From NCBI GenBank assembly GCA_002269645.1, contig NIVC01000218.1, forward strand, positions 80,407 through 144,406: DNA of 64,000 nt, read 5' to 3'. The stretch's first letter is position 1, and every line of letters begins with the position of its first letter. The notes below the pieces were generated by a model that did not search any database, had not been told where the DNA came from, and saw nothing but the letters and a program-made list of their open reading frames with translations. The position numbers and the translations under genes are program-made. Below, one piece after another: positions 1-43,194 of the stretch. This DNA is from Macrostomum lignano. Lineage: Eukaryota.

Positions 1-2581
1 CAAAAAAATACACTACTTTTTTACTAAGTAAATCTTCCATAGTACTCCATAAAGGAATAATAGGAAAGCAAAAAGAGAGGGAGAGTGATAATCATTCTTC
101 TCTTTTCTTGCCCCTTTTGCTTTCTCTCCTCTGAACTCCTCTAACTCTTATTTATTTAGAGTAGTATAGAGAATTTAGTAAAAAAATATACATATTCCAC
201 TATTTTAGCTGTTTTTGCACTTTTAGGTAGGAAGACTTAGATTTAAGAAATTTTTAGTTTGCCTAAAATATTCTCTATAGTGAGTTTAGGGAAAGGTGCA
301 AAATTTTGTATCATTTGGTTGAGTTGTTTAGGAGTCTATGGCAAATAAGTTTGTATATAGATAGATAGATATATATACAGAGTTTTCATTTCTATGGTTT
401 GAGCAAATTAATTATAAACACTAGCCTATGCAAGCAATCACTTAATAATAGGCCTAATAAGGCTAATATAGTAATACTAAGCCTAATAATAGATTTGAAA
501 GATTGAAATCAAATAATTATCCAGAATACAGAAATTCAAAATTCAAGATTATATAGACCTTATTATTTTTCCTTCTTTTAGTAATAAAAAACTTACTTAT
601 ATTGTATAATCACAGCAGATGGAGCTCTATTTAGGTCATGTCTATACCTAGGATATTTGAATAAATTCTACAAATATGTGGGTCACATTAATGGTAAAGT
701 CTAAAAGGTAGTAAGTTGATTAACTGAAAATTGATTCAATAAAAACAGAGCAAAAATTTGACTCAGTTTACTCTCATGGCTTAAGAGTCATCTCAGTCTA
801 ACTTTTAATTTTAAGTTATGTTAAGTTAATACCATCAGTATGACTTTTTCTCTAGGAATTGGCTTCAATATATTATAGTGCCTTAGCCAATGTGGGTTGT
901 TATGCTTGTTTTTAGAATTTAGATCTTATTTTTTAATTAATCAAGGTCTTTTCATCAAAATAGTATATTTTTTATTTCAAAAAATCTGTTTTTTGTTTTT
1001 TACCTATTAAACTGCATGCATAACTTTAAAATTTCATGCTATCAATCAGCTAGTCTAATACTAAAACTGTCATGGACCTAAAAGTTAGTATATTTGAATC
1101 TAGGGCTGAAAGGTCACCAACTGACTTCTTTATTACTGATTTAAACAGTGTGACCATGGATACAACACTAAGTAAAGTTTTTTATCTTTGTTGGAACAAG
1201 CAGTCGAATGTGAATTTCAATTGGACTGCATCTCATGTTGGTAAGTTGTCAAAATATCTTATATAAATATATACGAGTATCAGTAAATCATTTTTGAAAT
1301 GTATTTATTTTCAAGTCAATGCCAAAGAAGAAGCCCTTTCTATGGAGAATGGGTTAGAAAGAGTTATTGATATAGCCTAATGCAGTAAGAAAATCGTCTC
1401 CTATGTCAATCCTGACCATTCCACTGGCGCCTGAGCACATGCGCACCAGCACTGTATGCAGATATGCACTTGTACACACGCTCACAGGGTGGGTGTATAG
1501 CAGCCCTTTGACTTTCCAATCGTTGGGCACCTAGGCCTACCAGTTCATCTGGCAGCATTGCACGCCTCTCCTCGTGTGCCTTCATTTCTTCCTTCCTCTG
1601 TTGGTTAATGTCTCCATTTATAGTTTCTCCTCATGTCTCTTTAGGCTTTATTCACCATCCATCTATTAAAAAGAACTCAGTGTAGCAAACTCCAAGGTAT
1701 TCCTAGAATACCCTAGCCAAGGATTACTTAGGTGGATAGGAAACTACATTTCATGAAAAATTATAAAAATGAATGGTTAAAAATAAAAAGGTAAAAAAAT
1801 GAATGACCTATGGTCAACTCATAGGTTTTATAAATCTATTTTATCATCTCTGTTACACATATTGTTACACAGTCAGCTAAGAATTAGAAAAAATATACAT
1901 AAAAACAATGAGTCAAGCCGTGCCATGCATTTTTATGTTGTATGTTTTTTGGTACTGGGAATGTATGTAGAATTAAAAAAATAAACATAGAATCAAAATT
2001 TTCTGAGCAAAAAGCTTTGTGAATGGACAAGCGTGGTACCTGCGGTCTAGGCTTACTGGTTTGTCTACTTACACCAGGTTCCTGCTTTTCTCTAATCCTA
2101 GTATGTAGTGTTTAAAGAACGGAGTCAGGACACCAATGAATTTTTGCAAACACTAATTCCTTTAGAATTTTATAAATTAAAAATGTCGCAATGGAAGCAG
2201 ATGCTTTCCCAAGAGCCCAACTTTTCTTTACTAGTAGTGAAGTCCCAAAATTAGCGATTTACCCGCTCTAATTATTTCCCCTAGCTAAAACTACTGTTAG
2301 TAGCGTAAAAGCATTTTTAATCCGTGCCTATTCTACTCCTTAATTAATGCCCTACTACATGAATATCAATAGAGCCATAAGAAAGGTAAAACAAATGAAA
2401 ATATGAACACAGGGTCTGCCTCCTATGAAAAGCAATAACAATTTTTCTGCTGAAAAAATAAAATCTGCTTCCTGAAATTTTCTAAGAAACGTACTTTCCC
2501 GTCCTACTTTAGTAGTCCTTGACCCTAGCAAGCTTGGAATTGAGTTTTACTTTTCAATTTCAATTGCTCTACTTTGTTCAG

Positions 2582-4465
2582 TGGCCATCTGCCGCGGAGT
2601 TCGCCACGAGGACCTGTCGAAAAGTCTCAATCAGCTGTTGCACCAGGATGCCAAATCCGTGACCGGCAGCAAAACTAGTTTAAGCGTACAATTTGTTGCT
2701 AGAAATCGTCACCGTTCTTCGGCCAATTCTCAGCAGCTGGTTGAGCAGACTCTCCGCTCATTGCACTCCGCCGCTTTGCTGCCTGGCGGTCTGCTGGCTC
2801 TGTGCAAAGCCGCCTCGCAACTGGACGCAGCTGATGTTCCCGGGCTGGGTGAAGATCGCCGGGCACAAGAGATTATCACTGATCACCGTCTGCAGGGCGT
2901 CATGTTGAAACGGCCGCGACTATTGCAACAGCTGGTTAGGCGTCATCCAGTGTTAGCTAGCGCCATAGCAACCGTTGTTAAGCGGGTGCAACAGAATGCG
3001 CAGAGTGCTCGACTGCCAACATCGGCTCGGGTGCCGCTTCTGCGGTAAGGAACTGTGGTTATGGGGAAGATGTCAGGTTCTGGCACAGCCTAGCATATTA
3101 GAACTGTGTCAGTATGGCATAGGCTGCAGTGTCAGTATGGCATAGGCTGCAGTGTCAGTATTGCATAGGCTGCAGTGTCAGTATTGCATAGGCTGCAGTG
3201 TCAGTATGGCATAGGCTGCAGTGTCAGTATGGCATAGGCTGCAGTGTCAGTATTGCATAGGCTGCAGTGTCAGTATGGCATAGGCTGCAGTGTCAGTATG
3301 GCATAGGCTGCAGTGTCAGTATGGCATAGGCTGCAGTGTCAGTATGGCATAGGCTGCAGTGTCAGTATGGCATAGGCTGCAGTGTCAGTATGGCATAGGC
3401 TAGGCTGCAGTGTCAGTATGGCATAGGCTAGGCTGCAGTGTCAGTATGCATAGGCTGCAGTGTCAGTATGGCATAGGCTAGGCTGCAGTGTCAGTATGCA
3501 TAGGCTGCAGTGTCAGTATGGCATAGGCTAGGCTGCAGTGTCAGTATGCATAGGCTGCAGTGTCAGTATGGCATAGGCTAGGCTGCAGTGTCAGTATGGC
3601 ATAGGCTAGGCTGCAGTGTCAGTATGGCATAGGCTAGGCTGCAGTGTCAGTATGCATAGGCTGCAGTGTCAGTATGGCATAGGCTAGGCTGCAGTGTCAG
3701 TATGCATAGGCTGCAGTGTCAGTATGGCATAGGCTGCAGTGTCAGTATGGCATAGGCTGCAGTGTCAGTATGGCATAGGCTGCAGTGTCAGTATGGCATA
3801 GGCTGCAGTGTCAGTATGGCATAGGCTGCAGTGTCAGTATGCATAGGCTGCAGTGTCAGTATGGCATAGGCTGCAGTGTCAGTATGGCATAGGCTGCAGT
3901 GTCAGTATGGCATAGGTAACAGTTCACGCAGCCAAGTAAATGGTTAAAATTTACTTAACTTAAGTTATTACGTTAAATAAAAAAACTTAAGTTTATTTTT
4001 CCTGGTTATCTCTGTTTATCTATAGCACTGAACATCAATTATAAGCTTGCCCTTGCGTAACGCCCCCCCCCCCAGGTCGCTGGCAACATGCCCCCTGGCG
4101 CCAATTACAACGTAGACTTCGAGTCCGTTCTAGACGAAGACGAGGACAACGATGGCGAAGGTGAGGACGGCGCCGCCGCAGCCGCCATGCCGACACCATC
4201 GCCGATGCAACGCGGATCGCGCTCGCGTCCGACCTCTTCGTCAGCTTCCGGCGGAGCTTCGGGCGGTAGCGCCGGCCAAGTGTCGTCGGATTTCCTGCGC
4301 CAAGCGATGGCGCAAGCGTTCACTCTGATTCCAGCTAGGCAGAGGTTTGCTAACCAATTGCGAGCGCTGAGAGAGATGGGCATCACCGATGAGGAGGCGG
4401 CCCTACGAGTTCTCGAGCAGAATAATGGCGACCTGGAGCTCACTATTGATCACATGTTTAATTGA
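2582..4465 (+). CDS. UBL7: Ubiquitin-like protein 7 (UBL/UBA protein), 5'-partial; exons ~2582-3030 (or -3044) and 4076-4465
   Basis: VPGLGEDRRAQEIITDHRLQGVMLKRPRLLQQLVRRHPVLASAI resembles the central region of UBL7. The C-terminal UBA domain reads QLRALREMGITDEEAALRVLEQNNGDLELTIDHMF. Acceptors ttcag (2581) and ccccag (4075). The start codon was not located. Confidence 0.85.
3106..3916. repeat. 23-bp minisatellite (GTGTCAGTATGGCATAGGCTGCA, ~35 copies, with 22/27-bp variants) in the UBL7 intron
   Basis: Tandem units read directly from the sequence. Confidence 0.97.
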
Positions 4466-4914
4466 ACTTACGCACATTCTGTTCGTGTCGCGCTACTGTT
4501 AGTATAAATATAAGTTGAACAATTTCTCTGAAATATTCACGGCTATTTGTTTCTATAAGCTGAAATTTCAGGCCCTCAAAGCGGCGGATGCAGATTAGCT
4601 CTTAGGCTTTCCGACTTGGATTGAGTAAATTCAATTGCGTTTCTACCCGTTTTTGCTTTTTTGCTTCTTTCTTCCTTCTTTCGTGTTCTTTGCTTTAAGT
4701 CAATGCGGCGTATATTATTGCCTTTTTCTGTTCAAAGCATGAGTTGAATAAAAATACGATTTCAACGTAATTGCTGCTGCAAAATAGCAAAATGATTCGC
4801 AAAGTTGTCTCTCTGATCTTTTATTTTATTGCTGCAGCAAATTTCGTCTTTAGTTTGTGTGTTCCATAAACAACATTAGATGCACTAGATCCCCTAGTTA
4901 AAATACTTAGGCAT

Positions 4915-5158
4915 TAGATCCCCCAGTTGCACTGGTGCAGAAGTCTGTGTTTTAATTGTTTATTTCATTTACTGACTGCTAATAAATGGCCACCGATGGA
5001 TACATCAAATATTCCCCATTTATACAAGTGTCTATGGCAAACATATTTTTGCCTCGGTCAATAAACTTGTCACTCAAGCATTTATTGTGCAAACGGTGCA
5101 AATAAATGAAATAAACAATTAAACCATAGACTGCTGCACCAGTGCAACTGGGGGATAT
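4915..5158. mobile_element. MITE-like element with ~55-bp terminal inverted repeats, TA-flanked
   Basis: tagatcccccagttgcactggtgcag...tttatttcattta (4915-4971) is the near-perfect reverse complement of taaatgaaataaacaattaaac...ctgcaccagtgcaactgggggatata (5103-5158). No ORF inside. Confidence 0.75.
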
Positions 5159-6389
5159 ATGATTGATCTTATTTCCCGCTGCCCCGAAAGAAATAAATTT
5201 GCACTCGGCTTTGTACCATAGACTAAAAACTTAATTTTTCATTTTAAAGATTTTAAAGTAAACAAGAAAGTTCAACAAGTTCAAAGTCCAGTTAAAGTTC
5301 AACACCACTGCCGTGCAAATTGATCTCGCCTTGGAATTCCAAATCGCGTAGCTCACTGCCACCTCGCAGACCGAAGTGATTTTTAAGTAGAAGATAATGC
5401 ATGGTTTTTAGGGTTGTATTTCTTTAAATCCCCGAGAGCCGAGAGCCAAAGTTAATACAACCCGTAAAAACCATGCATTACCTCAATTAAATCCCTGCTT
5501 TCAAACTCCGGGATGTATTTAGATACAATTCGCAAAACAGTTTGAACCATAGTGCAAAGAGGGTTAAGGGGACGCAGTCCCCTGCGGGGGTGTGGGGGCG
5601 GAGCCCCCACATGTAGTATAGTGAATTTATAAGATATTCTATGGGTTTGAGGTCAGTATTTTACTTAAATCCGTAGAGCCGAAGGCTTTCGAGATATTAA
5701 TGACATAAAATTTGAATTAAAACATTTAAACTCAAAATTCTAACATTTTAAACTACTTTAATTTTGCGGGATGTATTCAGATAAATCCAGGAGCCATACT
5801 TGTATGTTTATGGTTGAAGTTGGGGATGGAGGTGTGGGAGCAAGCTATGTCTTACCATAGACAAAATTTCATTAAGAAATTTCTCGAGTCACGAAGGAAA
5901 AGAAGAGAGAAGCTCGCTTATTTATATACATACAATAATCCTTGCAATATGTCCGGGAAAGTGATCGATTAAATCCCGCAAAATAAAATGTCAATAACCT
6001 CCCTGAAAGTGAGCTTTAAAGTGGTTTAAATCACTTAATTAAACGCTATGGTCCGCTTTCATCTCGGAAAGTCAACTAGAAAGGATTTGAAGCGAAAAAT
6101 GAGGGAAGCTGCGATTTTTTTTATGAACCTGAAAGTTCGAAAGCACGGATTTAATAGTCCATTGTCGCGGCTTGCAGTTGTACCATAGAAAGATGCCAGC
6201 GGTTCTCCTACCTCGGCGGTCTGGTGCTCCACGTGGAGGATTCTATTCTATGGTAAATTTATATCGCAGAAGTCCTTGCAGCAATATAGTTTTATTTCGT
6301 TGTATAGTAATATCTTTCTTGATTTTCACTCTGTTCGTACCATAGACTAAAAACTTAATTTGGATTTCCTTTTTTAAGCTTCTGACTTG

Positions 6390-6785
6390 GCTAATGCATA
6401 GCTTTTATTGCTAAGTTAGAAAACGGAAATCCAAAGTGGAGACAGGTTGAGCCATAGAAAACATACACAGCCTGACTGAGAAACTTGAATGAGAGACAAG
6501 GCTCAATTAAATCTAGAATCGGACGTCCAAACTTGCTATATATAGCCAGAGTTTTGTCAAAGACAAAGCACAGCCTGTATAATTCAAGAAGGCGACTGCG
6601 CGGACACGTAAACCGTCAGCTAATTGTAGCAGCAGACAGTGGAAAGTGACAGTTCAGAGTCCCATTCTAGATTTAACTGCTTGTCTTTCAGTAAATTATA
6701 AGTCAGGTTTTTGTTGTCTATGGCCCAACCTGTCTCAACCTTGGATTTCCGTTTTCTAATTTGGTAATAAAAGCTATGCATTAGC
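6390..6785. mobile_element. Fold-back/MITE-like element with long inverted repeats
   Basis: 6390-6463 and 6712-6785 are ~90% reverse-complementary. A further inverted match lies at ~6505-6525 / 6659-6678. Confidence 0.7.
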
Positions 6786-6844
6786 AGAAGCATTCAGAAG
6801 CGGACAGAAGCGGACCCAATAAACATTGACAGTGAGAGCAGTGG

Positions 6845-7790
6845 TCACTTTGATCCTATGGCACTTTGACACCGAAAAATTAATGAACTCAGTATACGTA
6901 ATATGCGTAATACGCGTAAATACTCATCGAGATCATCAGCGCATTGAACTGAATCCTCGTCACACTTTTGGGTTAGATTTGGCAGCATTAGTTTTTGCTG
7001 AGATGATACGGGCGCGTTCTCATATCTTTTGCCCGAAGGGCACGAATAGACGTCATCTTCGAAGTTGCCTGAGCACACCTTTAGGTCTCTTATGCGAACG
7101 GACTCTAGATTCACTAGCCCAGATTGTGCAGCCAGTTCGTTGCAGTCACGTCACTCCGAAGAAATTTGGCAATTGCACTCGATGGTGTTCAATGGGTTAC
7201 GCCTCAGGACCACCTGAATACGTCATAAGTAGCACGTCTTGGAAAGCGTGACTCATGGTTGTTGAATTTCTGCTGCAGATGAAGGCGAGTCGGCTGTTGG
7301 GTGACGGCATTGTCGGCTGATTTTCCATGCAGGAATGGCATTCTTGCACTCTTGCGTGCAGGAATGGATGTCTATGGTAAAATCTCACTGAAAAAGCATT
7401 AGGCGCAGAAATGCATTCCTGCACGGTTTTGTGCATTCCTGCACGATGAATAATCCGACAATGGGATTCCTTCACGTTCAATCGTGCGTGAAGGACATCG
7501 AGAACTTGTGACCGTGCAGGAATCATTCATTCCGTGTGTGTAATCAAGCGAAGAAAGTGACCACTTTTCATATTGAGTTGACACAATTTTTTAGGATCTG
7601 TGGTGTGCGCTATTATTTTCAGCACTGCACTGTCAACAGAGTAGAGAGCTAAGTTCTCCAACGGTATTGCGTACGAGTATGAGACAACAGCCAATGCTAT
7701 GTTGGTCTTGAACCACCTTGAATTGCAGCTGTGCGCACTCCTTAATCGGGTTAGCTCACGATTTATATAGCTGATCCCAAGGCTAAACAA
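6845..7790 (-). pseudogene. Possible degenerate coding remnant (weakly LRR-like), interrupted by stops and a TGCAGGAAT-repeat insertion
   Basis: Fragmentary ORFs 7527-7790 and 6845-7114, plus VVLRRNPLNTIECNC (reminiscent of an LRR C-terminal cap). Not identifiable with confidence. Confidence 0.25.
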
Positions 7791-8058
7791 ATTGAGGATT
7801 ATCTTAAAGGTTGAGTGAGATCCACTGGCGCTAAAGTCATTGACTAAGAAAGGAAGTTCATTTCTGCACTCAATTCAAGCGAGATATGCACACGCACCTA
7901 ATTTTTTCCAGCTGTTACCAGTACCTTTTATAATGCTAGCACATCAATTGTGTATTTTTACTAATGCAACAACTATAACTATTCTGAATCAATGCTTTCC
8001 TGTTAGTTGAACATGTTTCTCTAATTTTCTACAAGGCACGAGTTGTTACTATAGTCAT

Positions 8059-9233
8059 TCAGGCATGGTTAAACAGGTATTTGATGACGAGCCGCATGCC
8101 AGGATCGATGTAGATCTCTCGCAGACGTCTAGCCAGGGTGTTGTGCTCGCAGCTCCGCTCAGCAGGTGCTGGATAATGATGCAGCCGGTCTTTCGCTAGG
8201 CTGCTCACTCTGTAGACAGCGAAGGCTTGGTAGCAGGACTCCACTTTGACTGGAATGCTGTTCCGGTTTATAGCAATTTCATCCGTGATGATGCTGCGAT
8301 CGTATTCAGTAACGCTGCAGAACCGCTTCTTGCTGAAATAGGTGCGAGAGCAGGGATCGTAGAGTCCGTTTCGAAAGCGGCTGTTGGCGCAGAGTACGTC
8401 CAGTTTGGGCTTGGCACTGAAGTAGTAAATTCCCTGAGCAATGTTGTCCAAGCTCCATGGATCCCACTCCAGATCTGGATCAACTGAAATCATCAGATCA
8501 ACTTTATCTGCCAAATTGTCGTAAATGTAGTTCAGGTACATATTTCTGAGGACACTCATTGTGATGCCGCGATCAACGAGTTCTCTTCCGTACGCTGCTG
8601 TCCCCAGCCGGGTCTGTGCACCTTCCCGGACCTGTATGTGATGTTAATTTTGCACGGGGCTCTTGAGTTTATTGGCGTGCATCCGAGAATCACCGCCTGA
8701 TTGTGTTTCCGACGCACGTCGTGAAGAAACTCTCGGGTGCCATCGTTCGAGTCATTCTCAACGAAAATCATCCAGTAGTCTTTGAAGAGCTTGCCCAATC
8801 TGTGCAACTCCACGACGTTTTTCTGCAAGCGCTCCTTGGCGTTTCGCACTGACGCGACAAATACGGCAGTTTTGGTGCGCATCCAGTCTCTCCCAATACG
8901 CGTTCGATAGTTTTGGTCAAGCTCGCGATTCTCTCGTCGCATAAGAGGCATACGTTCGCGTGTATGGACGAAGTACATGGAGCTGTTCTGCAAGTGCAAG
9001 ACTTCAGCGTGTCCGTAGCTAAAATCGGAAGATTTTTTCTCAATAAGTTCAGGATCGAGTTGTGTCACAGCGCTTCTGCTGGTTCTGTCTGGACGGTTGA
9101 TAGAAAGTATAGCGTTGGGAATTTTTCTTATCTGATGAAAGTAGTCCGTTGTGAGGTGTACATGTAGCATGGATAAACAAAACAGGACATTGCATGAAAC
9201 AAGAATGCCGGCGAAAAATTTCATGCCGATCAT
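8059..9233 (-). pseudogene. Intronless type-II membrane GT-A-fold glycosyltransferase (CAP59/GT69- or GT2-like), copy 1, frameshifted by a 1-bp deletion at ~8585
   Basis: ORFs 8556-9233 and 8059-8559 together match the intact paralogue at 16505-17671. Copy 1 reads gagttctcttcc where copy 2 reads gagttcttcttcc. This could be a real mutation or an assembly error. Confidence 0.8.
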
Positions 9234-10232
9234 TTTGCTATCATGGAATGTACGTGAGCCTTTTTTGACTAGTAATAGCGCGGTAATGCATTTTTCTTTT
9301 AGGATTGGCTGTTGAATAACTCGTTTAAGAATTGGAATGATAAAAACAAATTAAAACTATATACAATATATTTTTAATTGAATTAATAACTTGGCCAAAA
9401 AAATACATTTACACAACTTTCTTCTGTAAAAACTATTTTGTTAAGCTTTTCTCGACTTTTATAACAGAATATTTTTTTTAAAAATGACACGAATTTTGAA
9501 ATGTACGATTTTCTTATAACACGTGTCTCTTTGATTTCTACTGTAATTGTCATTGTCTGTCATATATATATATATATATGCTTACGCAGCTAAAATTGCT
9601 TGTTAGAAATTTTTAGGAACTTTAAATTGGGACATCGGGCTGAAAATTATTACTGATTTCTACAGAAGTACGCGCGTACCTTTAATCATTAGGGACCCAA
9701 AAGATAACAAAATTAAATTTCTATCTGGAGTTTTTTCTGAATTGATCAAATAATTCTAAAATTTATTATTATTTATGAGTTGTTTTCTATATTTGTTTGT
9801 GTTTGTGTTTCTTGTATTGGCTAGTTAATTTACTTTTATGGGTTAACTGAAGAAATGAAGTACAGGAGTTGTTTGTATTAGTATTGCACAGTTCTTGTGT
9901 TTAGGGCCGGTCTAGCCTGTCTCGGGGTTCATTTTAAATAAATTGAATTTAAAGTAAGATACATTGACTCAGAACTTGACCTTCTTGTCCAAAATCCTTA
10001 CATTCGATGCCCGATCCGGAGAAATCCGACAAATGTATGTCATGCTTGTACACTTTATTAGAAGGCCCATATCTTAATTTGAAACAGTTAATGGACATCT
10101 TAATTCTTAACCTGATATTACCACGATCACAAAAATCTAAAATTTTGGCCCGAGGCGGCTTCCTAAATTAAGAAAAGTTGCCGTTTTTATTGCATGGTAC
10201 ATTACTTCCATAGCCTACATTGCATGTAGTAT

Positions 10233-10475
10233 GGGGTTGTAGCCTGGTGGTTAGGGCATCGGACTCGCGACTGAAAGGTCTGGGTTTCGATTCTCGAACC
10301 ACTCGGAACAATTTGTGTCCTTGAACAGGACATTTAACTCTGCATTGCTTCAGTTCACTCAGCTGTAAAATTGGGTGCCAGCAATAGCTGGGGTAATTGA
10401 GGATGTGTGTGGCGACCCTAATGCAGTCCTTGGACTGAACAGCCGTACGCAGTCTTCAAATGCGCCGCGCAATAG
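10233..10475 (+). mobile_element. tRNA-derived SINE with CORE-like central domain
   Basis: A-box-like gtagcctggtggttag and B-box-like ggtttcgattc, followed by tgtgtccttgaacaggacatttaactc...cagctgtaaaattggg (MIR/CORE-like). A second copy lies on the minus strand at ~43195-43425. Confidence 0.8.
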
Positions 10476-10769
10476 CGACAGAATTAGACACCGAATGAAC
10501 AGACACGTGCTGATCATACTTACATTCACATGCAGTCTACAGATATGATATTACCACGAGGCAAAGGGTAAGGGTGCCAAAGGGAGAGCCTTTTATGTCA
10601 TAGACACATAATTAGACAGGTACATACTATTTTATAGGAGCAGAAAGAAAGGATTCAATTTTCAAAATGGAAGAAGTGGATATCAACTTTGAAATAGACT
10701 AATTTCAACTTCGACTGGCTGGACAACTTTGAATTACTTGACTTAGCTGTAATTGGTACTGGTCTGTAG

Positions 10770-13700
10770 ACACAGCGGTAGCCCCTGAAAGCCCGTAGAC
10801 AGGTAGATGCGTGGGGCCGGTCAGGGTGGTCCGCCGGTCCGTCCTGCAGCGTGATCTTTGTAGGAAATAAGGGGGCTTGTCTAGTCGCCCAAAGGAACTA
10901 TTGTAGATGAGCCGTGGAATGCTGTCGGGCTGGGAGACCTCGTCAATGGACGGGTCGGCCCGAGGTAGCGTAGCCGGTCTCTCGTAAAGAAAGGGCAGTG
11001 AGTGACAAACAAAGTGCTGAGTATCTTTATTGTCGTACGTGCAAAAAGGGCAAAGTTCACTCTCTCGAGATCACCTCGGAGAAAGCAGTGCCTAGCGAGG
11101 TAGCCATGGCCGGTAAAGGTCATGACAAGGGCTGGAGATGATGGTGGTGCAGCTTCGCTCCGGCTTCTGCCCGCTTCTCCGCGATTTTCAGTCGAGGATC
11201 AACCCAGGCGTCGTGGCGGTTTGTCCCGACTGTGGCTTTGAGCCCCAAACGGTGGCATACCTCTTCAACTGCCCTGCCTATCTGACGCAGCTTTGTCCGG
11301 GTGATCTATGGACTAACCCGTCCAGAACCGATACGTGCAACTTTCTGGAATCGGCCGCTCTCGGACCAAGGGAACAGGGCCAAGGAAAGAGCCAAAGCCG
11401 CCCCTCCTGGCGAGTGTGTCTGCCAACTCGTTCCCCGGAAACCCTGCGCGCCCTGGGATCCACTTCAACCTGATAGTATTGCTACTGGCCAGGAGGTTGA
11501 GCTGCCGGGCGCAGTCAGCGACTGTCCGGGAGTTTGTGGTGGTGTGGCAAAGGGCCTGTAAGGCCGCTTGGCTATCAGAGTGGATAACGATAGTCTCTCC
11601 TCTCGTACCCTTGGCATTCAGTTCTGCAGCGCAAGATCGAGCTAATAGCAAGGGCTTCGTTCTGGAAGACTGTGGAGGGTCTGCCAGTGTGCTGGGCATG
11701 CGTGGCAATGACGCGGCTGTAATGATGATGCAGACCCCAAAGCCGGCGCGACCGTCTTTGATGGATCGGTGCGTGTAGCAGTGGACCTCATCCTTTGAGG
11801 GGATGATGACCTTGTAGCGCTGAAAAGATGTTGAGAGTGCAGGGTTCAACGTCAGATAAGACGTGGAGCCCGCCGCTGTCTCTCAAGTTTTTGAGGTATA
11901 AGAGGTCGGCGTGAGGCAGGAGCTTGCGCGTAGCCATGGCCCTATGGGGCAGGAAACGAATGCCAGCGTCAATTACACGGCGGGCAGTCTTAGCAGCTTC
12001 CCTGCGGACAAAGATGTCCAGCGGGGGATGTTGAGGCCATCGTAAGGAGAGCAGACGGGGGCGCTCACGATCATGCGGCATGGGCCCCCTTGCGCTCTCC
12101 TGAGAGTCTCCAGACAGGTCTTCATCCGCAGGGCGCTAGCCCAGACCATGCCGCGGTGCGAGATAGCAGGCCTAACCATTGCAGTGTAGATCCACCAGAG
12201 GTGCTTGGGGGTGCGCCCCAAAGTGGTGACGACGACCCTACGCAGTTGCGCGAGGACTGCGAGGGCCTTCTTGGCTTTTGCTTGAGCGTGGGGCGACCAG
12301 TTCAGCCTGTGGTCCAGGGTAAATACCCAGACATTTAGTCTGCTTGCAGAAGGGGATTTCCCTTCCGTAAAGCGTGAGCGGCTGAATTTGCCACTTGGTC
12401 CTGCTGGTTAACATGATCGCTGCCGTCTTAGTCTCAGAGAGCTTTAGACCACAAAGATTCGCCCATTGCTCAGCGGCGTAGAAAAATTCTGAAGAATTGA
12501 AGGTCCCTGATGTTATCTGGGGACGGACCAGACGCCACCGCGGTGACATTCTGACTACTTTGAGAATGGGGTCAGGCCGAGCATCCCGAAGGAGCTCATC
12601 GATGACCATATTCCAGAGCACTGGAGACAGCACCCCATCTTGCGGGCTACCTTTGCAGACCGAGACCGTCCTCTGGTGGCCCAGCAGACTGGCGGTGGCC
12701 GTGCGATGGCTGATCATGTACATGATCCATCTGGTGAGATTTGTGTGCGTTTGCCTCTTACAAAGAGCTCTTCCGAACGCCTCGAAGAGGACGTTATCGA
12801 AGGCGCCAATGATTTACAAGAGGGTCTCCTGAGCGAAGCCGTTTCCAAGCACGGCCTACTCAAGTTTATCGACCAGGGCGTGCAGCGCGCTTTCATTGCG
12901 TGCGACCCGCCTGAAAAGCGTGCTGGTTTTCGCTGAGAGGCTTGTTCTTCAGCTTCACAGAGAGGAGGCGCCAGAGCACCAGTCTTTCCATCAGCTTGAC
13001 CAGGGAGAAGGTCAGACTGATTGGTCTGAAGGATTTGATAGAATGGTAGTCCGGGCGGCCTGGCTTCGGAATAAAGATCACCTTTGCCTCGGTCCAAGCC
13101 TGTGGGACATGGCCAAGCGTTATGCATGCCCGAAAAAGGCTTACGCAGTTTACGCAGGAAGCCTGGGCATTTAACCGCCTCTTTTAGGAGGGCAGGTACA
13201 ATGCCGTCGGGTCCTGGGGCTTTGAAAGCTTTGAAGTAGTTTGCCGCGGTACTCTGTGATGATAGAGTCAGCCAGCGCGTGACCTCCTTCAGAGTGGCCC
13301 GGAGTGGTCAGGTTGGCCGGCTCGTTGGGGGAAAAACGCAGAGAGCATTACATCAAGCGTTTCCCCTGGGTTATCCATGGACGTGCCGTCGGTGCGTTTG
13401 ACCGAGGAGAGCTTAGACATTTTGTCCAGCGTTGCTTTTGAATTGCTTTAACAATTCTGGAGGTGGAGTGTAAGCCTCTAGCTCCTCGCAGTATTGACGC
13501 CATTTCTGAGCTTTCGCGTTCCTGACCTGCCTTTTAAACTCATGGATTGCTTCATGATAGGCGGTTTGGTCCGCTGGGCTCTTGGCTTCAGTTGCTCTGC
13601 AATGGAGTCTCTTAGCACTGCGACGGAGGTTGCCGAGCTCGGGATTCCACCACTGCGCAGATTTTTTCCCTTTATAGGCTTTTAAAGGACAGGATGCCTC

Positions 13701-14995
13701 AAAGGCGGCGGTTAGCGTTTCTGTCAACAAAGTCGCGCACTCATCCGCTCCTTGGCAAGTCGACGTGATCGTGGATGGTTGGCCGGAAAACCGATAAACT
13801 CCTTCAGGGCGAGCCCGAAGGTTTCCCAATCAGTGTTTCTGATGTCCAGTCTCCATGTAACACGATTTTGCTGCGCGCGGCCATCAGGTTGAAGGAGATG
13901 AACTTGTGATCGGAGAGTGAGAGGCTGGAAGCACCCGCCAGGCAATGCTTTTGTAGAGCCCGGGTGTTGCGAGTGTGGTATCGATCACCTCCTATCAGCG
14001 CCCGTTGTCAAATGTAGGGGTGGACCCAGAGTTGCAGAACTCAAGGGTCGTAGAGGCAACGTAGGCTAGGAGTCTTCGCCTCTCTGATTAATGCCCTTGC
14101 TGCCCCAGTGAGTATGGTGGGCGTTGAATGTCGCCGGCAACCATGAGCTCGCAGTTTTTGGCAGAGCAAAGCTCGACCAGCGTAGCGAGGGTTCTAACGA
14201 CGACCGCAGCATCACCTGGTAGGTAAAGCGAGGCAATGAGAGTGGTTTTTCCAGGAAGGAGATCTTCAGATTGGATGACGCAGATGTCCCTGTTAGACAG
14301 GTCCGATCTGTGTCACGCGCTGAGCGTTTTGCCGGGAAAAATGCAGTCTCTGGGAGGCTGATTGGCACTGCCGGGGTAAGTATAGAAACAGTTGTAGCCG
14401 GAAGGGGCGTTCTGAGGCTAACCTCTGAGGGTCCAAGGTTCCTGGACGAGGATGAGCCCCGGTATGTGGAGCTCGGCCTAACGCATAAGGTTGACCGAGG
14501 CTGCGACGCAGTGCTGCAAGTTGATCGGCATCGGATTCCCAGGCTGCTGATCATTATCACGCAGTTGGGGAATCGTGGAGCAGGTCATCCTCCTCAGAGG
14601 TCATCCTACTCATCCTCGGAGGTGGTTGGCCCGCAGACCTCCATGGGAGTTTCAGCGTCCTCGGCAGTTAAGGTGGCTGTGGAGTCCTCCGCGGACGTGA
14701 GCCCAGCGTGGACGTTTCCGTCGCCTCCCCTGTATGCTTCGGCGCCGTCACTACCCATACCCTCCGCCTCGTTGGTCAGGTCGATGCGGGTGACGCCAAC
14801 TTCCTAGTGAGTGACAGCCTCTAACCAGTCAGTCAGCGCCTCCACGCTTTTAACCTGGTCTTCTGGCTGTTGGGTTGGAGCACGAGAAGTGCAGACCCGC
14901 TCAAGATGCGCCCGGAGGTTCCTGGCCTGGTCCAGCGCGCGCTGAACCAGACCGGACCTCCGGGGGCTCCTGGTAGGTCTGCAGTTGCTCACTTT
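10770..14995 (-). mobile_element. Decayed LOA/R1-type non-LTR retrotransposon (APE endonuclease, RT, RNase H, CCHC knuckle) with many frameshifts
   Basis: APE start INLQHC...LILVQEPW (~14530-14430) and FNAHHTHWGS. RT motifs IPKPGR..SFRPISL, KGSPQ.GVLSPVLWNMVIDELL and IYTAMVRP. RNase H IHSDSQAALQAL...WIPGRAGFPGNELADTLA (11313-11849). C-terminal FTGHG...CPFC...H..CP (~10950-11125). Ends are approximate. Confidence 0.9.
11138..11330 (+). mobile_element. 3'-terminal fragment of a different (I/Ingi/Nimb-like) LINE embedded antisense in the LOA-type element
   Basis: QLRSGFCPLL..FQSRI....CPDC....T..YLFNCP...TQL.P.DLWTNP is the typical C-terminal zinc-knuckle region of I-group LINEs. Confidence 0.7.
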
Positions 14996-15916
14996 CTCAG
15001 CTTCTCAGCTTCAGAGGCCTCTAACCAATTGGTTCGATTTCGCCAATGGCCACAATAATTTTTGGTTACTCCACCAAAGCTGCCATGCGATTCACTCTTC
15101 ATGCATGTACGAACGTATGTGGGCCAACCTCCGGGGCATACAAAGTGTGTACATGCACAGCCAGACGATAAGAGAGTCAGGCCGGGCCGGACGCTATGCA
15201 CCCTGTCTAAGCGTGTGGTATGTTGTACGTGTCCGTGTGCGGGGTGACACTTCTCAGGTGTCAGTTTTTGGCGGCGGTGCCCAAAGCGCCTATGTGAACG
15301 ATATAAACTAGCCATCCTGGTGTGAGTTTTCGCACATAATAATTCCAACCTACAGCTCATCTCCATTGAAGGCTACTTCAGGTGCCAATGGCGCGCCTTT
15401 GCAGATTTTGGTAGACATTTTCCCGCCAATCTACTAAACGTAGCACTCTACGAAAAGTAGTATCGAAAAGTGCGTCAATGACGAAAACTGTTAATGAGAG
15501 TAGCGGGTTTTTATATTCACCCCATGGAGAAAGAAAGGAATGGATGATGGAGTGCTAATCTGACTGAGATATTTTTGTTTTGCTCTTTTTCGACTTTTGG
15601 CACCTAGCTGGTACCCCCCGACACACTTATCAAATTGTTTTGGCTTAATCCGCTTACATATACATGTATGCATTGTGCGTAGGCACAAAATCCGCCTAAG
15701 TAGATAAAGCTGTCTCCATTGAATTACTGATCCTGTTTGTCACACGTACGCAAGTCTGCACATAAACAAAAACTATAATTTGCTACAAAGTACAAATCAT
15801 CTACGCAAGTTAAACCCTGTTTTGCCACCTGTTGCCATAACTTATCGCGTATTTTTGTGAAATTTTGTTATTGCCAACAGTGAAAATATTTTTGCTTAAT
15901 GTTTTTGTGTTGCCCT

Positions 15917-16045
15917 CCAGGGGCGCCAGCACCAAGGGGCTTTTAGCACCTGGGGCTTTAGCACCAGGGGCGCCAGCACCAGAGGCGCCAGCACCAGAGG
16001 CGCCAGCACCAGAGGCGCCAGCACCAGGGGCGCCAGCACCAGGGA
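15917..16045. repeat. 15-bp tandem repeat (AGRGGCGCCAGCACC)
   Basis: About 8 units read directly. Confidence 0.85.
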
Positions 16046-16504
16046 CTTTTTAGCACCAGGGGCGTTAGCAGGAGCCTATCAGTAGCACGTGCATATCAAT
16101 CTAGATCTCATTTCACAAGCTCATGCAATACTTCGCAGAGTCAACACTAATATAAGCTTATCCGGCATATGATCAGTCTGGACAAAATATGCTTATGAGT
16201 GAGCAACAGCTGTTCTCTTCTATAGCATCTGTTTTCTTTATGGATATGCAGCACAAAGGATCGATGCAAAATACTTACAAAACAAGGTCGCCCGATCGAG
16301 CGAGTTTAACCTTATTTTTGCAACCTGTTTACCATCCATGCATGCAGGTGCTCACATGCAATACACTGTAGGTATCATATTTTTTTGTATTTTTAGTCTT
16401 TCGCAAGAAAATTACTTTTTTGTCGTTTACTACTTTTATTACTCCCTTCACCTCCAGTTTTAGTAGCATAAATTAGACTCAATCTGTAGCTATTAATGAA
16501 CCAT

Positions 16505-17671
16505 TCAGGTATGATCGAACATCGCTTTGATGACGAGCCGCATGCCAGGATCGATGTAGATCTCTCGCAGACGTCTAGCCAGGGTGTTGTGCTCGCAGCT
16601 CCGCTCAGCAGGTGCTGGATAATGATGCAGCCGGTCTTTCGCTAGGCTGCTCACTCTGTAGACAGCGAAGGCTTGGTAGCAGGACTCCACTTTGACTGGA
16701 ATGCTGTTCCGGTTTATAGCAATTTCATCCGTGATGATGCTGCGATCGTCTTCGGTAACGCTGCAGAACCGCTTCTTGCTGAAATACGTTCGAGCACAGG
16801 GATCGTAGAGTACATTTGAAAAGCGGCTGTTGGCGCAAAGTACGTCCAGTTTGGGCTTGGCGCTGAAGTAGTAAATTCCCTGAGCAATGTTGTCCAAGCT
16901 CCATGGATCCCACTCCAGATCTGGATCAACTGAAATCATCAGATCAACTTTATCTGCCAAACTGTCGTAAATGTAGTTCAGGTACATATTTCTGAGGACA
17001 CTCATTGTGATGCCGCGATCAACGAGTTCTTCTTCCGTACGCTGCTGTCCCCAGCCGGGTCTGTGCACCTTCCCGGACCTGTATGTGATGTTAATTTTGC
17101 ACGGGGCTCTTGAGTTTATTGGCGTGCATCCGAGAATCACCGTCTGATTGTGTTTCCGACGCACGTCGTGAAGAAACTCTCGGGTGCCATCGTTCGAGTC
17201 ATTCTCAACGAAAATCATCCAGTAGTCTTTGAAGAGCTTGCCCAATCTTTGCAACTCCACGACGTTTTTCTGCAAGCGCTCCTTGGCGTTTCGCACTGAC
17301 GCGACAAATACGGCAGTTTTGGTGCGCATCCAGTCTCTCCCAATACGCGTTCGATAGTTTTGGTCAAGCTCGCGATTCTCTCGTCGCATAAGAGGCATAC
17401 GTTCGCGTGTATGGACGAAGTACATGGAGCTGTTCTGCAAGTCCAAGACTTCAGCGTGTCCGTAGCTAAAATCGGAAGATTTTTTCTCAATAAGTTCAGG
17501 ATCGAGTTGTGTCACACGGTGTTTGCTTCGCTCTAGCTGATTGATAAAAATAATACCATTTGTAAATTTTCCGAATTGATAGAAGTAGTCCGTTGTGAGA
17601 TGTATCATGGATATACAAAACAAAACATTGAATGAAACAAGAAGGCAGGCAAAAAGTTTCTTGTCAAACAT
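16505..17671 (-). CDS. Intronless type-II membrane GT-A-fold glycosyltransferase (CAP59/GT69- or GT2-like), copy 2, intact (388 aa from ATG 17671)
   Basis: N-terminal TM (LFACLLVSFNVLFCISMI). Motifs AVFVASVRN, FKDYWMIFVENDSNDGTREFL, LRNMYLNYI, the DxD-like DPDL, PVKVESC and CEHNTL. The ORF track extends it upstream to a TTG at 17755. Confidence 0.85.
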   Translation of the reverse strand: MFDKKLFACLLVSFNVLFCISMIHLTTDYFYQFGKFTNGIIFINQLERSKHRVTQLDPELIEKKSSDFSYGHAEVLDLQNSSMYFVHTRERMPLMRRENRELDQNYRTRIGRDWMRTKTAVFVASVRNAKERLQKNVVELQRLGKLFKDYWMIFVENDSNDGTREFLHDVRRKHNQTVILGCTPINSRAPCKINITYRSGKVHRPGWGQQRTEEELVDRGITMSVLRNMYLNYIYDSLADKVDLMISVDPDLEWDPWSLDNIAQGIYYFSAKPKLDVLCANSRFSNVLYDPCARTYFSKKRFCSVTEDDRSIITDEIAINRNSIPVKVESCYQAFAVYRVSSLAKDRLHHYPAPAERSCEHNTLARRLREIYIDPGMRLVIKAMFDHT

Positions 17672-18505
17672 TTTGTTGCGTACTTGATTCGTTTGTTTGT
17701 TTTTTGCCGTGACAATTTTTTTACCAGTCGTTGACTTGTAGAAAAAGCTTAACACTAGAAGTACTATCTGAATTAAAAAGCTTTATTTTATTGTGATTCG
17801 CACTCTTCACTCTTTTTATACTTCACGAAATGCTACTTGTTAAAACTGTTTGACAATTTTAGTGAATTGGAAGAAAATATAACTATGGTAATAGTTTTAA
17901 TTAAAGTAGTTGTAGATTTAATTTTTTAAATTACGGTTGATTATTTACTTTTGTTATTTTTATAAAACTTTTGTGTAAAATTTAAAATAACCTAAAATAA
18001 CTATGCTCACTTAGCATGTTGCGCGGCCTGATGACGCCTGAGCCTGAGCCTGATTTTATGTAAGCTATTGAACTTTTTCGTCATCTCGATGCTACAGTGT
18101 ATAGTGCAATGCAATATAATTGAAGTGCAGTGTATGTCAGGTATAGGATCGGATGAATTATACTTTTCATTGCTGTAACTATTGACTTGCAAGGAAGTTA
18201 TAAGATAAATTTCTATAAAGTTATAAGCAAAATAAATTAAAAAAGAGGTGAAAAAACTTTCTTATGAACTAATTATGTTGTAAATACAATTTTAATTTAA
18301 TAATGTTTGAGATTTCAAGGAGAATTTGAAAATTTTGAATTGATTTTTGTTCATAACAAAAGTAGATAGGCTAGGCCTAGGCCTATGACGTATATTATTA
18401 TAATATTTAAACAAAAGTGCTAACTTTAATTATTTTTTTCAATAATGAAAAAGTTGTTAAATTCAGGTAATGTAGCTCGCTTGATAAACAGTGAATAAAT
18501 GAAGG

Positions 18506-43022: not shown

Positions 43023-43194
43023 TGAGGGAAATGACTATTTATACTATTTATTTATTCTTATTTAAGAATTCGACACTGCCATCTTTTTACTTTTGTCTAT
43101 GGTCAAAACACCGTCTGTTTCACTGTACGTGAAGACACATCTGGTTATAATTGATTACACCCGCCCTAATGGCCAGATAGGCAACCGACAGCTG

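What the first reader, a model, noticed from the sequence alone, without database searches (positions are those of the whole stretch)
8059..17671. Duplicated intronless glycosyltransferases of a family atypical for animals (HGT candidate)
The proteins carry the signature K.AVF...VRN...L..LG..FKDY....VENDS.D.TR.FL ... LRN.YL.YI ... D.D ... PV.V.SC ... CEH..L ... Y.DP.M. I recognise this as a GT-A-fold group related to fungal CAP59/CMT1 (GT69) and GT2-like enzymes, best known from fungi, protists, bacteria and giant viruses. Both copies are intronless, whereas most host genes here have minisatellite-filled introns, and they sit in a TE-rich island. They have an N-terminal TM anchor and stem typical of Golgi enzymes, suggesting a domesticated foreign glycosylation activity (e.g. 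for mucus or adhesive glycans). Family assignment and function are inference.
Basis: partly seen in the sequence, partly recalled or inferred. Interest (0 to 1): 0.7.

Follow-up and report, generated by a model that had tools for sequence, protein, structure and literature searches.

The report
Virus-like glycosyltransferase gene pair in a flatworm
Two neighbouring intronless genes in the flatworm Macrostomum lignano encode membrane-anchored sugar-transferring enzymes of a family (CAP59/Cmt1-like) that was found in no other named animal and whose closest identifiable relatives are in giant viruses, so an old gene transfer followed by expansion in this flatworm lineage is the most likely origin.

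Summary
The window is Macrostomum lignano DNA, 99.86% collinear with GCA_002269645.1. It carries two same-strand, single-exon paralogues: copy A (16505-17671, intact, 388 aa) and copy B (8059-9233). Copy B is split here by a 1-bp deletion at 8583 but is intact in the other assembly.

Each protein has an N-terminal membrane anchor, a stem and a GT-A catalytic domain (ENDSxD, DPD, CEH). Copy A itself gets no Pfam hit. However, 34 of 60 family members match PF11735 (CAP59_mtransfer) at E<=1e-6, so the CAP59/GT69-like assignment holds by transitive homology.

M. lignano has at least six paralogue groups. With two fragments from unidentified organisms they form one clade (100/100 bootstrap). No homologue from another named animal turned up. 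The nearest labelled relatives are giant-virus proteins (Marseilleviridae, GVMAGs); Bacteroidota homologues are more distant.

Synonymous sites are saturated between paralogues while dN is only 0.17-0.28, which indicates long purifying selection. Synonymous divergence differs 14-fold along A versus B, which indicates gene conversion. Host linkage, transposons and host-like GC3 exclude contamination.

Ancient horizontal acquisition is the best reading. The donor is unresolved, and substrate, expression and biological role are unknown. This is a new member of a known kind, of moderate interest.

The parts
16505..17671 (-). Copy A: intact single-exon CDS, 388 aa plus stop, of a type II membrane GT-A glycosyltransferase (CAP59/Cmt1-like)
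   Evidence: ORF. It is 100% identical in GCA_002269645.1. Homologues; fold.
8059..9233 (-). Copy B: paralogous CDS (the P0001 / BOX15_Mlig008488g3 locus). In this window a 1-bp deletion breaks it into two ORFs, 8556-9233 and 8059-8559.
   Evidence: The gene is intact (391 aa) in the other assembly.
8582..8584 (-). Site of the 1-bp deletion (GG to G) that frameshifts copy B in this window
   Evidence: Pairwise alignment to L002.
17600..17659 (-). N-terminal signal-anchor / transmembrane segment of copy A (residues 5-24, LFACLLVSFNVLFCISMIHL)
   Evidence: Kyte-Doolittle 19-residue mean of 2.18, and the only segment above 1.6. AlphaFold models helix 4-49.
17327..17599 (-). Stem region of copy A (residues about 25-115), low model confidence, with one N-glycosylation sequon (N80)
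   Evidence: pLDDT below 50 for residues 34-57 and 79-95. Sequons.
16523..17326 (-). GT-A catalytic domain of copy A (residues about 116-383)
   Evidence: Alternating strand/helix pattern with pLDDT of about 85-97. Foldseek matches to GT-A enzymes and to a Marseillevirus glycosyltransferase.
17189..17206 (-). ENDSND motif (residues 156-161) directly after strand 2. Inferred to be the nucleotide-binding motif equivalent to the GT2 'DDGSxD'.
   Evidence: E156, N157, S159 and D161 are invariant in the 60-sequence alignment. It aligns to the ArnC 'IDDGSSDNS' stretch.
16919..16927 (-). D249-P-D251, the DXD motif at the end of strand 4. Inferred to be the metal / nucleotide-sugar phosphate binding site.
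   Evidence: D251 is invariant and D249 is conserved in at least 90% of sequences. Its position follows strand 244-248.
16589..16597 (-). C359-E360-H361 motif, family signature. The His is inferred to be the C-terminal metal ligand.
   Evidence: C359 is invariant and E360/H361 are conserved in at least 90% of sequences.
16526..17516 (-). Copy-A side of the near-identical tract shared with copy B (about 8080-9069). Interpreted as a gene-conversion tract.
   Evidence: Identity is about 99% here against about 75% in the first 170 nt. dS is 0.039 in the core against 0.56 at the N-terminus.
16435..16440 (-). AATAAA about 65 nt downstream of the copy A stop codon (candidate polyadenylation signal)
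   Evidence: Read directly from the sequence. Function not tested.
17814..17820 (-). TATAAAA about 145 nt upstream of the copy A ATG, in a 28% GC flank (candidate core promoter element)
   Evidence: Read directly from the sequence. Function not tested.
11313..14560 (-). Degraded retroelement between the two copies (RNase H and reverse-transcriptase fragments in broken frames). Context only, not part of the genes.
   Evidence: Pfam RNase_H at 1.4e-07 and an RVT_1 fragment. GC is 0.51-0.55.
1072..4465 (+). Neighbouring intron-containing host gene (340-aa product in the NCBI annotation). One intron holds a 23-bp minisatellite (3106-3916). This shows physical linkage to ordinary host DNA.
   Evidence: Called gene in L002. 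Collinearity, minisatellite, weak CUE/UBA-like C-terminus.

Best explanation
These are two tandem, same-orientation members of a flatworm-lineage gene family. The family encodes type II (N-terminal anchor, luminal stem) metal-dependent GT-A glycosyltransferases and is a divergent branch of the CAP59/Cmt1-like (Pfam PF11735, GT69-like) group.

Inferred mechanism. The protein sits in the ER/Golgi membrane with its catalytic domain in the lumen. It binds a nucleotide-sugar through the ENDSxD loop. It binds the diphosphate with a divalent cation through D249-x-D251 and H361. It then transfers one sugar to a secretory-pathway acceptor, either a glycoprotein or a glycolipid. Donor and acceptor are unknown; GDP-mannose with an alpha-1,3 linkage is only an analogy to fungal Cmt1.

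Inferred origin. A single ancient horizontal acquisition occurred in an ancestor within the Macrostomum lineage. The source was the gene pool now seen in giant viruses (Marseilleviridae and other Nucleocytoviricota) and in uncultured microbes.

After acquisition the gene adapted to host composition and expanded to at least six paralogue groups under purifying selection. Copy A and copy B are still being homogenised by gene conversion.

Shown here: gene structure, fold, family membership by transitive homology, monophyly of the flatworm clade, host linkage, purifying selection and the conversion pattern. Inferred: HGT and its direction, cellular location, chemistry and biological role.
For: Identity and integration.
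- The window is collinear at 99.86% over 18.4 kb with M. lignano contig NIVC01002680.1.
- The genes lie 3.6 kb from an intron-containing host gene and among LINE/retroelement remnants and minisatellites.
- Paralogues sit on contigs of up to 832 kb.
- GC3 is 0.57, within the host exon range of 0.50-0.64.

Fold.
- AlphaFold catalytic core pLDDT is about 85-97.
- Foldseek matches PDB GT-A enzymes at E about 1e-7 and probability 1.0.
- The BFVD top hit is 'Glycosyltransferase [Marseillevirus LCMAC102]' at E 1.4e-23, 26% identity, TM 0.76.

Family.
- The profile search found 2507 representatives at E<=1e-3.
- 53 of 60 members match PF11735 at E<=0.01 and 34 of 60 at E<=1e-6. GT2 matches only 1 of 60 at that level.
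- P0004 scores 32.1 bits against a cut-off of 28.8.

Conserved catalytic-type residues.
- E156, N157, S159, D161, R164, R219, R227, D251, D290 and C359 are invariant across 60 sequences.
- D249, E360 and H361 are conserved in at least 90%.

Distribution.
- The only named proteins among the hits are from M. lignano. The 37 other clusters looked up are metagenome-only.
- 139 relatives were found on IMG/VR giant-virus stretches, including complete isolate genomes of 347-380 kb.
- The best viral match scores 113 bits against about 52-57 bits for Bacteroidota homologues.

Phylogeny.
- All M. lignano paralogues plus two fragments from unidentified organisms form one clade in 100 of 100 NJ bootstraps.
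- That clade sits inside the virus/metagenome radiation, with a Bacteroidota clade outside.

Selection.
- Copy A versus P0002 gives pS of 0.79-0.81 (saturated) and dN of 0.17-0.28.

Gene conversion.
- dS is 0.56 in codons 1-54 and 0.039 in codons 55-381. The flanks are unalignable.
Against: - The window protein itself has no Pfam hit at E<=1, so family membership rests on transitive homology.
- The tree is neighbour-joining on sequences that are 25-30% identical. Deep nodes are weak and the rooting is arbitrary.
- The immediate sister of the flatworm clade is made of unlabelled metagenome proteins (86 of 100 replicates). These could come from viruses, protists or other uncultured organisms.
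- Fungal GT69 sequences could not be fetched, so vertical descent from an opisthokont ancestor with many losses was not tested by phylogeny.
- Only about 40 of the 150 best representatives could be checked for their source, so a named eukaryotic homologue among the rest cannot be excluded.
- No flanking virus-derived genes remain.
- No expression evidence was obtained, and no exact product was on record in the read-assembly collection.
- Copy B is frameshifted in this window.
Confidence: 0.6

Rival explanations
1. Vertical inheritance. The family descends from an ancestral eukaryotic or opisthokont CAP59/GT69-type gene. It was retained in the Macrostomum lineage and lost in nearly all other animals. 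The giant-virus copies are captures from eukaryotic hosts.
For: - The Pfam family was defined on fungal (opisthokont) enzymes, and members also occur in a green alga (PMC5509433).
- The paralogues are old: synonymous sites are saturated.
- Base composition is host-like.
- The sister group of the flatworm clade is unlabelled.
- Fungal sequences were not in my tree.
Against: - No homologue from any other named animal appeared in searches of 5.8 and 1.84 billion proteins. Many independent losses would therefore be required.
- M. lignano proteins score lower against the fungal-based PF11735 model (no hit at E<=1 for copy A; at most 27.6 bits for a paralogue) than viral and metagenome members do (E down to 8e-14).
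- Similarity to viral and metagenome proteins extends into the juxtamembrane region outside the Pfam domain.
- Every paralogue examined is intronless.
Confidence: 0.22
2. Contamination or a chimeric assembly join. On this reading the glycosyltransferase genes belong to a virus, food organism or microbe and not to the flatworm genome.
For: The closest labelled relatives are viral. The genes are intronless and sit in AT-rich DNA.
Against: - The same 18.4-kb arrangement appears in a second public assembly at 99.86% identity.
- The genes are flanked on both sides by flatworm-type minisatellites, LINE/retroelement remnants and an intron-containing host gene.
- At least six paralogue groups lie on large M. 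lignano contigs of 115-832 kb.
- Identity to any viral protein is only about 30%.
Confidence: 0.02
3. Remnant of a recently integrated giant-virus genome (an endogenous viral element), with the two genes as passengers and not domesticated host genes.
For: Virus-like relatives, lack of introns, and a transposon-invaded neighbourhood.
Against: - No other virus-like ORFs lie in the flanks; the ORFs of 100 aa or more between and around the copies are retroelement fragments or have no match.
- The paralogues are dispersed and ancient, with saturated synonymous sites.
- dN is far below dS.
- GC3 is host-like.
- Relatives from two other unidentified organisms nest inside the M. lignano paralogue radiation.
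Confidence: 0.03
4. One or both copies are decaying pseudogenes with no present function. Copy B in particular is inactivated by the frameshift at 8583.
For: - Copy B is split into two ORFs in this window.
- Omega for A versus B is about 0.3-0.44, on few substitutions.
- No transcript evidence was obtained.
Against: - Copy A is intact in both assemblies, and copy B is intact in GCA_002269645.1.
- The deletion lies in a GG dinucleotide, a typical site for a long-read indel error.
- All family-invariant residues are retained in both copies.
- Purifying selection across paralogue groups has been long-lasting.
Confidence: 0.12

Closest known systems
Fungal GT69 / CAP59_mtransfer family (Cryptococcus neoformans Cmt1p and Cap59, Neurospora GT69-2, Aspergillus ClpA)
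   Same: - Same Pfam family by transitive homology: 34 of 60 relatives at E<=1e-6, with near full-length coverage of the model (3-232 of 242 in P0004).
- Type II membrane topology.
- Golgi-type architecture. GT69-2 is Golgi-localised according to PMC8092235.
   Different: - Copy A itself scores below any reportable Pfam threshold.
- The flatworm clade carries its own insertion (about residues 196-218, YRSGKVHRPGWGQQRTEEELVDRG) and conserved blocks such as LDNIAQGxYYF.
- The host is an animal.
- Mannosyltransferase activity is not shown.
Giant-virus glycosyltransferases of the same family (Marseilleviridae isolates, Marseillevirus LCMAC102 A0A481YUL9, GVMAG contigs; more distantly Sylvanvirus and ChoanoV1 proteins)
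   Same: - Closest labelled relatives in both sequence and predicted structure: about 26-33% identity, Foldseek E 1.4e-23, TM 0.76.
- Same N-terminal anchor, same ENDSxD / DxD / CEH motifs and same conserved cysteines.
- Similarity extends upstream of the Pfam domain.
   Different: - The viral proteins are shorter (about 300-340 aa) with a short stem.
- The flatworm proteins have a stem about 60-80 residues longer plus the clade-specific insertion.
- None of the viral proteins is biochemically characterised, as far as my reading shows.
Bacterial homologues (mostly Bacteroidota MAGs, and Pedobacter sp.)
   Same: Same family and motifs, about 290-300 aa.
   Different: - More distant: 26-31% identity over shorter stretches and about half the bit score of the viral matches.
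- They form a separate outer clade.
- Some 'bacterial' MAG contigs are the same DNA as giant-virus MAG contigs.
GT2-type GT-A enzymes with solved structures (TarP, RmlT, ArnC) and COLGALT1 (GT25)
   Same: Shared GT-A fold and a shared N-terminal nucleotide-binding half.
   Different: - Only 11-16% identity, with TM of 0.33-0.45.
- Pfam GT2 matches are partial (about 50 residues) and below threshold.
- Not the same family.

Membership tests
Pfam PF11735 CAP59_mtransfer (CAZy GT69-like) | The protein itself matches the family HMM at or above the gathering score (28.8 bits) | tested here: not met
   Copy A has no hit at E<=1. Copy B (P0001) scores 17.0 bits and paralogue P0002 scores 27.6 bits.
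Pfam PF11735 CAP59_mtransfer (CAZy GT69-like) | Homology to bona fide members shown through intermediate sequences | tested here: met
   The profile search links copy A to 2507 representatives. Of 60 aligned members, 53 hit PF11735 at E<=0.01 and 34 at E<=1e-6, with a best value of 8e-14. P0004 scores 32.1 bits over model positions 3-232 of 242.
Pfam PF11735 CAP59_mtransfer (CAZy GT69-like) | GT-A fold with a DXD motif after strand 4 | tested here: met
   AlphaFold model and Foldseek hits. D249-P-D251 follows strand 244-248. D251 is invariant and D249 is conserved in at least 90%.
Pfam PF11735 CAP59_mtransfer (CAZy GT69-like) | Type II membrane protein of the Golgi | tested here: inconclusive
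   A single N-terminal hydrophobic segment (residues 5-24) and a stem are present. Localisation cannot be tested with these tools.
Pfam PF11735 CAP59_mtransfer (CAZy GT69-like) | GDP-mannose-dependent alpha-1,3-mannosyltransferase activity, the activity of Cmt1p | not testable with these tools
   Requires an enzyme assay. About 25% identity or less to characterised members gives no basis for inferring specificity.
Glycosyltransferase family 2 (PF00535). UniRef names paralogues 'Glycosyltransferase family 2 protein'. | Match to the GT2 HMM above the gathering score (23.3 bits) over the domain | tested here: not met
   There are only partial matches of about 50 residues to the N-terminal nucleotide-binding part: 13.9-21.7 bits in relatives and none in copy A. 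Only 1 of 60 members matches at E<=1e-6.
Horizontally acquired gene in an animal genome | Physically linked to undoubted host DNA, i.e. not contamination | tested here: met
   Collinear in a second assembly. Adjacent intron-containing gene, LINEs and minisatellites. Paralogues lie on contigs of 115-832 kb.
Horizontally acquired gene in an animal genome | No orthologues in other animals | tested here: inconclusive
   No named animal other than M. lignano appeared in any search. All 37 other clusters looked up are metagenome-only. However, only about 40 of the top 150 representatives could be traced, and two clade members come from unidentified organisms.
Horizontally acquired gene in an animal genome | Nested within a non-animal clade in a supported phylogeny | tested here: inconclusive
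   The NJ tree places the flatworm clade (100/100) inside the virus/metagenome radiation. Deep nodes are weak, the root is arbitrary, the sister group is unlabelled, and fungal GT69 was not included.
Horizontally acquired gene in an animal genome | Functional in the host (expressed, under selection) | tested here: inconclusive
   Purifying selection is shown (dS saturated, dN 0.17-0.28). Expression was not tested, and no exact product is on record in read assemblies.

The most novel reading that the evidence does not exclude
An ancestor of macrostomid flatworms captured a membrane glycosyltransferase directly from an infecting giant virus (Nucleocytoviricota, Marseilleviridae-like). The gene was then amplified into a multigene family that now builds lineage-specific glycans, for example on adhesive, mucus or reproductive secretions. 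This would be a rare documented case of a giant-virus gene domesticated and expanded in a bilaterian animal. It would also be indirect evidence that such viruses once infected flatworms.
Probability: 0.2. Interest if true: 0.65.

Novelty: new member of a known kind. Interest (0 to 1): 0.45.

Why it matters
If the horizontal origin holds, Macrostomum lignano carries an expanded, selectively maintained family of secretory-pathway glycosyltransferases that other named animals appear to lack. M. lignano is a laboratory model with transgenesis and RNAi.

That would give a tractable case for studying how a foreign glycosylation enzyme is integrated into an animal's Golgi machinery. It would also point to lineage-specific glycans, which matter for lectin-based work on flatworm adhesion, mucus and reproduction.

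It would add a data point on gene flow between giant viruses (or their hosts) and animals. The tandem pair is also a clear small example of gene conversion keeping catalytic domains identical while the membrane anchor and stem diverge.

If the origin is instead vertical with massive loss, the finding is an ordinary lineage-specific gene family.

Tried and rejected
- Direct Pfam, NCBIfam and PDB sequence searches with the window protein returned nothing useful. The profile search against PDB gave only sub-threshold GT2 N-terminal matches.
- The word-indexed protein search with a 60-sequence alignment returned only 13 proteins and no new names.
- An attempt to use the 60-sequence alignment for locus finding failed because it had no conserved stretch. 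Smaller alignments worked.
- The metagenome scan with a flatworm-clade alignment found only a giant-virus contig already held.
- Exact-product look-ups for copy A (388-aa and 416-aa versions) found nothing, so no transcript evidence was obtained.
- Literature searches found nothing on these genes. The terms tried were M. lignano plus HGT, glycosyltransferase or giant virus; the gene identifiers; and PF11735.
- Retroposition as the origin of the A/B pair was rejected. Similarity stops at the ATG and the stop codon without covering the UTRs, and synonymous divergence is mosaic.
- The retroelement between the copies is not related to the LINE at 36985-40094.
- GT2 membership was rejected.
- Contamination was rejected.

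Full report
WHAT IS THERE

The window is Macrostomum lignano DNA. The best protein hit is a hypothetical protein of that species. Window positions 1-18403 are collinear at 99.86% identity with contig NIVC01002680.1 of assembly GCA_002269645.1.

- Copy A runs 16505-17671, 388 aa from the first ATG. It is intact and 100% identical in the other assembly.
- Copy B runs 8059-9233. In this window it is split into two ORFs by loss of one G at about 8583 (GAAGAGGAAC to GAAGAGAAC).
- In the other assembly copy B is intact and annotated as BOX15_Mlig008488g3 (P0001, 391 aa).
- I cannot tell whether the deletion is an assembly indel, an allele or a real inactivation.

No third copy exists in the window.

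GENE ANATOMY

Both genes are single exons, collinear with every homologue. Paralogue P0002 is also single-exon.

DNA similarity between A and B begins at the ATG and ends at the stop codon. The flanks cannot be aligned.

Divergence inside the coding region is mosaic.
- Identity is about 75% over the first 170 nt (membrane anchor and start of the stem).
- It is about 99% over the next 990 nt, apart from a patch at codons 285-308.
- The last few codons are again diverged.
- Synonymous divergence is 0.56 in codons 1-54 but 0.039 in codons 55-381.

I read this as an old tandem duplication whose catalytic part is being homogenised by gene conversion. Retroposition does not fit the pattern.

Copy A has a TATAAAA about 145 nt upstream of the ATG, in a 28% GC flank. 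It has an AATAAA about 65 nt after the stop codon. Neither signal was tested.

THE PROTEIN

- Residues 5-24 are the only strongly hydrophobic segment.
- A stem of low model confidence follows.
- A well-modelled alpha/beta domain runs from about residue 116 to 383.

Foldseek places the model among GT-A glycosyltransferases in the PDB. The hits are COLGALT1, RmlT, TarP, ArnC and GalNAc-T2, at E about 1e-7, probability 1.0 and TM 0.35-0.45. No close solved relative exists by sequence.

Across 60 family members several residues are invariant or nearly so.
- ENDSxD (156-161) follows strand 2, in the position of the GT2 nucleotide-binding 'DDGSxD'.
- D249-x-D251 lies at the end of strand 4, the canonical DXD position.
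- C359-E-H361 lies near the C-terminus.
- Several arginines and cysteines are also conserved.

From established GT-A enzymology I infer a divalent-cation-dependent transfer from a nucleotide-sugar in the lumen of the secretory pathway. Donor and acceptor cannot be inferred at this distance.

FAMILY ASSIGNMENT

Copy A alone gets no Pfam match. Its paralogues and more distant relatives do.
- P0002 scores 27.6 bits and P0004 scores 32.1 bits, against a cut-off of 28.8 for PF11735 CAP59_mtransfer.
- Of 60 aligned members, 53 match at E<=0.01 and 34 at E<=1e-6.
- GT2 (PF00535) gives only short sub-threshold matches.

The flatworm branch is divergent enough to fail the direct test.

Characterised members of this family are fungal. 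Examples are the Golgi alpha-1,3-mannosyltransferase Cmt1p and Neurospora GT69-2 (PMC8092235).

DISTRIBUTION

A profile search of 1.84 billion representatives found 2507 relatives, 140 of them at E<=1e-30.

The top hits are further M. lignano paralogues.
- There are at least six groups sharing 36-69% identity with copy A.
- They comprise many gene models, on contigs of up to 832 kb.

One 212-aa fragment from a sequencing run (SRR31628434) and one from a JGI metagenome are 57-58% identical to one M. lignano paralogue group. Both are followed by flatworm-style minisatellites.

All 37 other clusters I could trace come from metagenomes only.

Labelled relatives come from two sources.
- Giant viruses: 139 relatives on IMG/VR stretches, including GVMAGs and complete isolate genomes of 347-380 kb. 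From memory, those lengths match Marseilleviridae isolates.
- Bacteroidota and a few other bacterial MAGs.

The best viral structural match is 'Glycosyltransferase [Marseillevirus LCMAC102]', at E 1.4e-23 and TM 0.76.

The contig of the first non-flatworm hit carries densely packed genes, including an RNA polymerase Rpb6 subunit and a protein kinase.

Two 'bacterial' MAG contigs are the same DNA as giant-virus MAG contigs.

PHYLOGENY AND SELECTION

In neighbour-joining trees (205 and 256 sequences, about 250 columns) the results are as follows.
- The M. lignano paralogues form one clade in 100 of 100 bootstraps.
- When the two unidentified-organism fragments are added, they fall inside that clade. 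The combined clade has 100/100 support; M. lignano alone has 0/100.
- Family diversification therefore predates the split from those organisms.
- The clade sits within the virus/metagenome radiation, and 11 bacterial sequences (mostly Bacteroidota) form an outer group.
- Its immediate sister is unlabelled metagenome proteins, and deep nodes are weak.

Between copy A and P0002, synonymous sites are saturated (pS 0.79-0.81) while dN is 0.17-0.28. The family has therefore been under purifying selection in the host for a long time.

GC3 is 0.57, within the range of neighbouring host exons.

CONTEXT

- A degraded retroelement with RNase H and reverse-transcriptase fragments lies between the copies.
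- An apparently intact LINE lies at 36985-40094.
- The window is full of 18-62 bp minisatellites.
- An intron-containing host gene ends 3.6 kb from copy B.
- No virus-like ORFs flank the genes.

INTERPRETATION

The best reading (confidence about 0.6) has three parts.
- A single ancient horizontal acquisition brought in a CAP59-like GT-A glycosyltransferase from the gene pool now seen in giant viruses and uncultured microbes.
- The gene was then domesticated and expanded.
- Gene conversion is still acting between this tandem pair.

The main rival (about 0.2) is vertical descent from an opisthokont GT69 gene with loss in nearly all animals. I could not test it properly because fungal sequences could not be fetched.

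Contamination and a recent endogenous giant-virus insertion are effectively excluded. Copy B may be a pseudogene in some haplotypes.

NOVELTY

I found no literature on these genes. Public databases call them hypothetical proteins or 'GT2-like'.

The enzyme type and the phenomenon of foreign glycosyltransferases in animals are both known. This is therefore a new member of a known kind, of moderate interest. It would be more interesting if a direct giant-virus origin and a lineage-specific glycan function were demonstrated.

Noticed in passing
window 36985-40094 (-): An apparently intact non-LTR (LINE) retrotransposon. It has a 517-aa ORF with an Exo_endo_phos endonuclease domain and a 511-aa ORF with a full RVT_1 domain (E 3e-29). 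GC is 64-67%, far above the window mean of 45%.
   Followed up: partly
window 11313-14560 (-): A degraded retroelement between the two glycosyltransferase copies, with RNase H and a reverse-transcriptase fragment in broken frames. It is not related at the DNA level to the LINE at 37-40 kb.
   Followed up: partly
window 1072-4465 (+): A host gene (340-aa product in the NCBI annotation). One intron is filled by a 23-bp minisatellite (3106-3916, about 34 copies). The last exon ends in a weak CUE/UBA-like motif (Pfam CUE 21.7 bits).
   Followed up: partly
window 26560-28068, 28803-29651, 31490-32375, 44183-45064, 45772-46748, 48199-49151, 54142-54843, 59957-60800, 62883-63679: Very many long minisatellite arrays (periods 18-62 bp, up to 77 copies). 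They cause the extreme GC/AT-skew blocks and the spurious long ORFs in the mechanical ORF list, for example the 601-aa ORF at 26528-28333.
   Followed up: partly
window 10233-10471 and 43193-43424: A dispersed repeat of about 240 bp, 85% identical, in inverted orientation. Its nature is unknown.
   Followed up: no
window 42402-43022 (+): A 206-aa ORF with a weak COMM-domain match (19.6 bits, below the cut-off of 22.4). It may be an exon of a host COMMD gene.
   Followed up: no
L038/L032 (GTDB 'bacterium isolate WB9_2_064') versus L024/L020 (IMG/VR GVMAG-S-3300012000-65): Contigs filed under a bacterial MAG in the genome collection are 99.8-99.9% identical to contigs of a giant-virus MAG. The same DNA has been binned both ways, so 'bacterial' labels for this family need care. 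The CPR 'Colwellbacteria' contig L028 also clusters with virus-type sequences.
   Followed up: partly
L126 (Logan SRR31628434, 1193 bp) and L127 (JGI 3300040801, 932 bp): Fragments from unidentified organisms encode proteins 57-58% identical to M. lignano paralogue P0158/P0159. Minisatellite-like repeats follow the stop codon. L126 has a frame change between its N- and C-terminal halves. They are probably other macrostomid flatworms.
   Followed up: partly
Family members P0112, P0115 and others in alignment A3; BFVD A0A5B8HVK7 (ChoanoV1): Some virus or metagenome members of the family are fused to DUF4214 domains (Pfam E down to 6e-34). The flatworm proteins lack this architecture.
   Followed up: no
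Paralogues P0006/P0158 (alignment A7): One M. lignano paralogue group has ENES in place of the otherwise invariant ENDS in the nucleotide-binding loop. The P0006 gene model also has an aberrant C-terminus lacking CEH. This may reflect a gene-model error or a degenerate copy.
   Followed up: no
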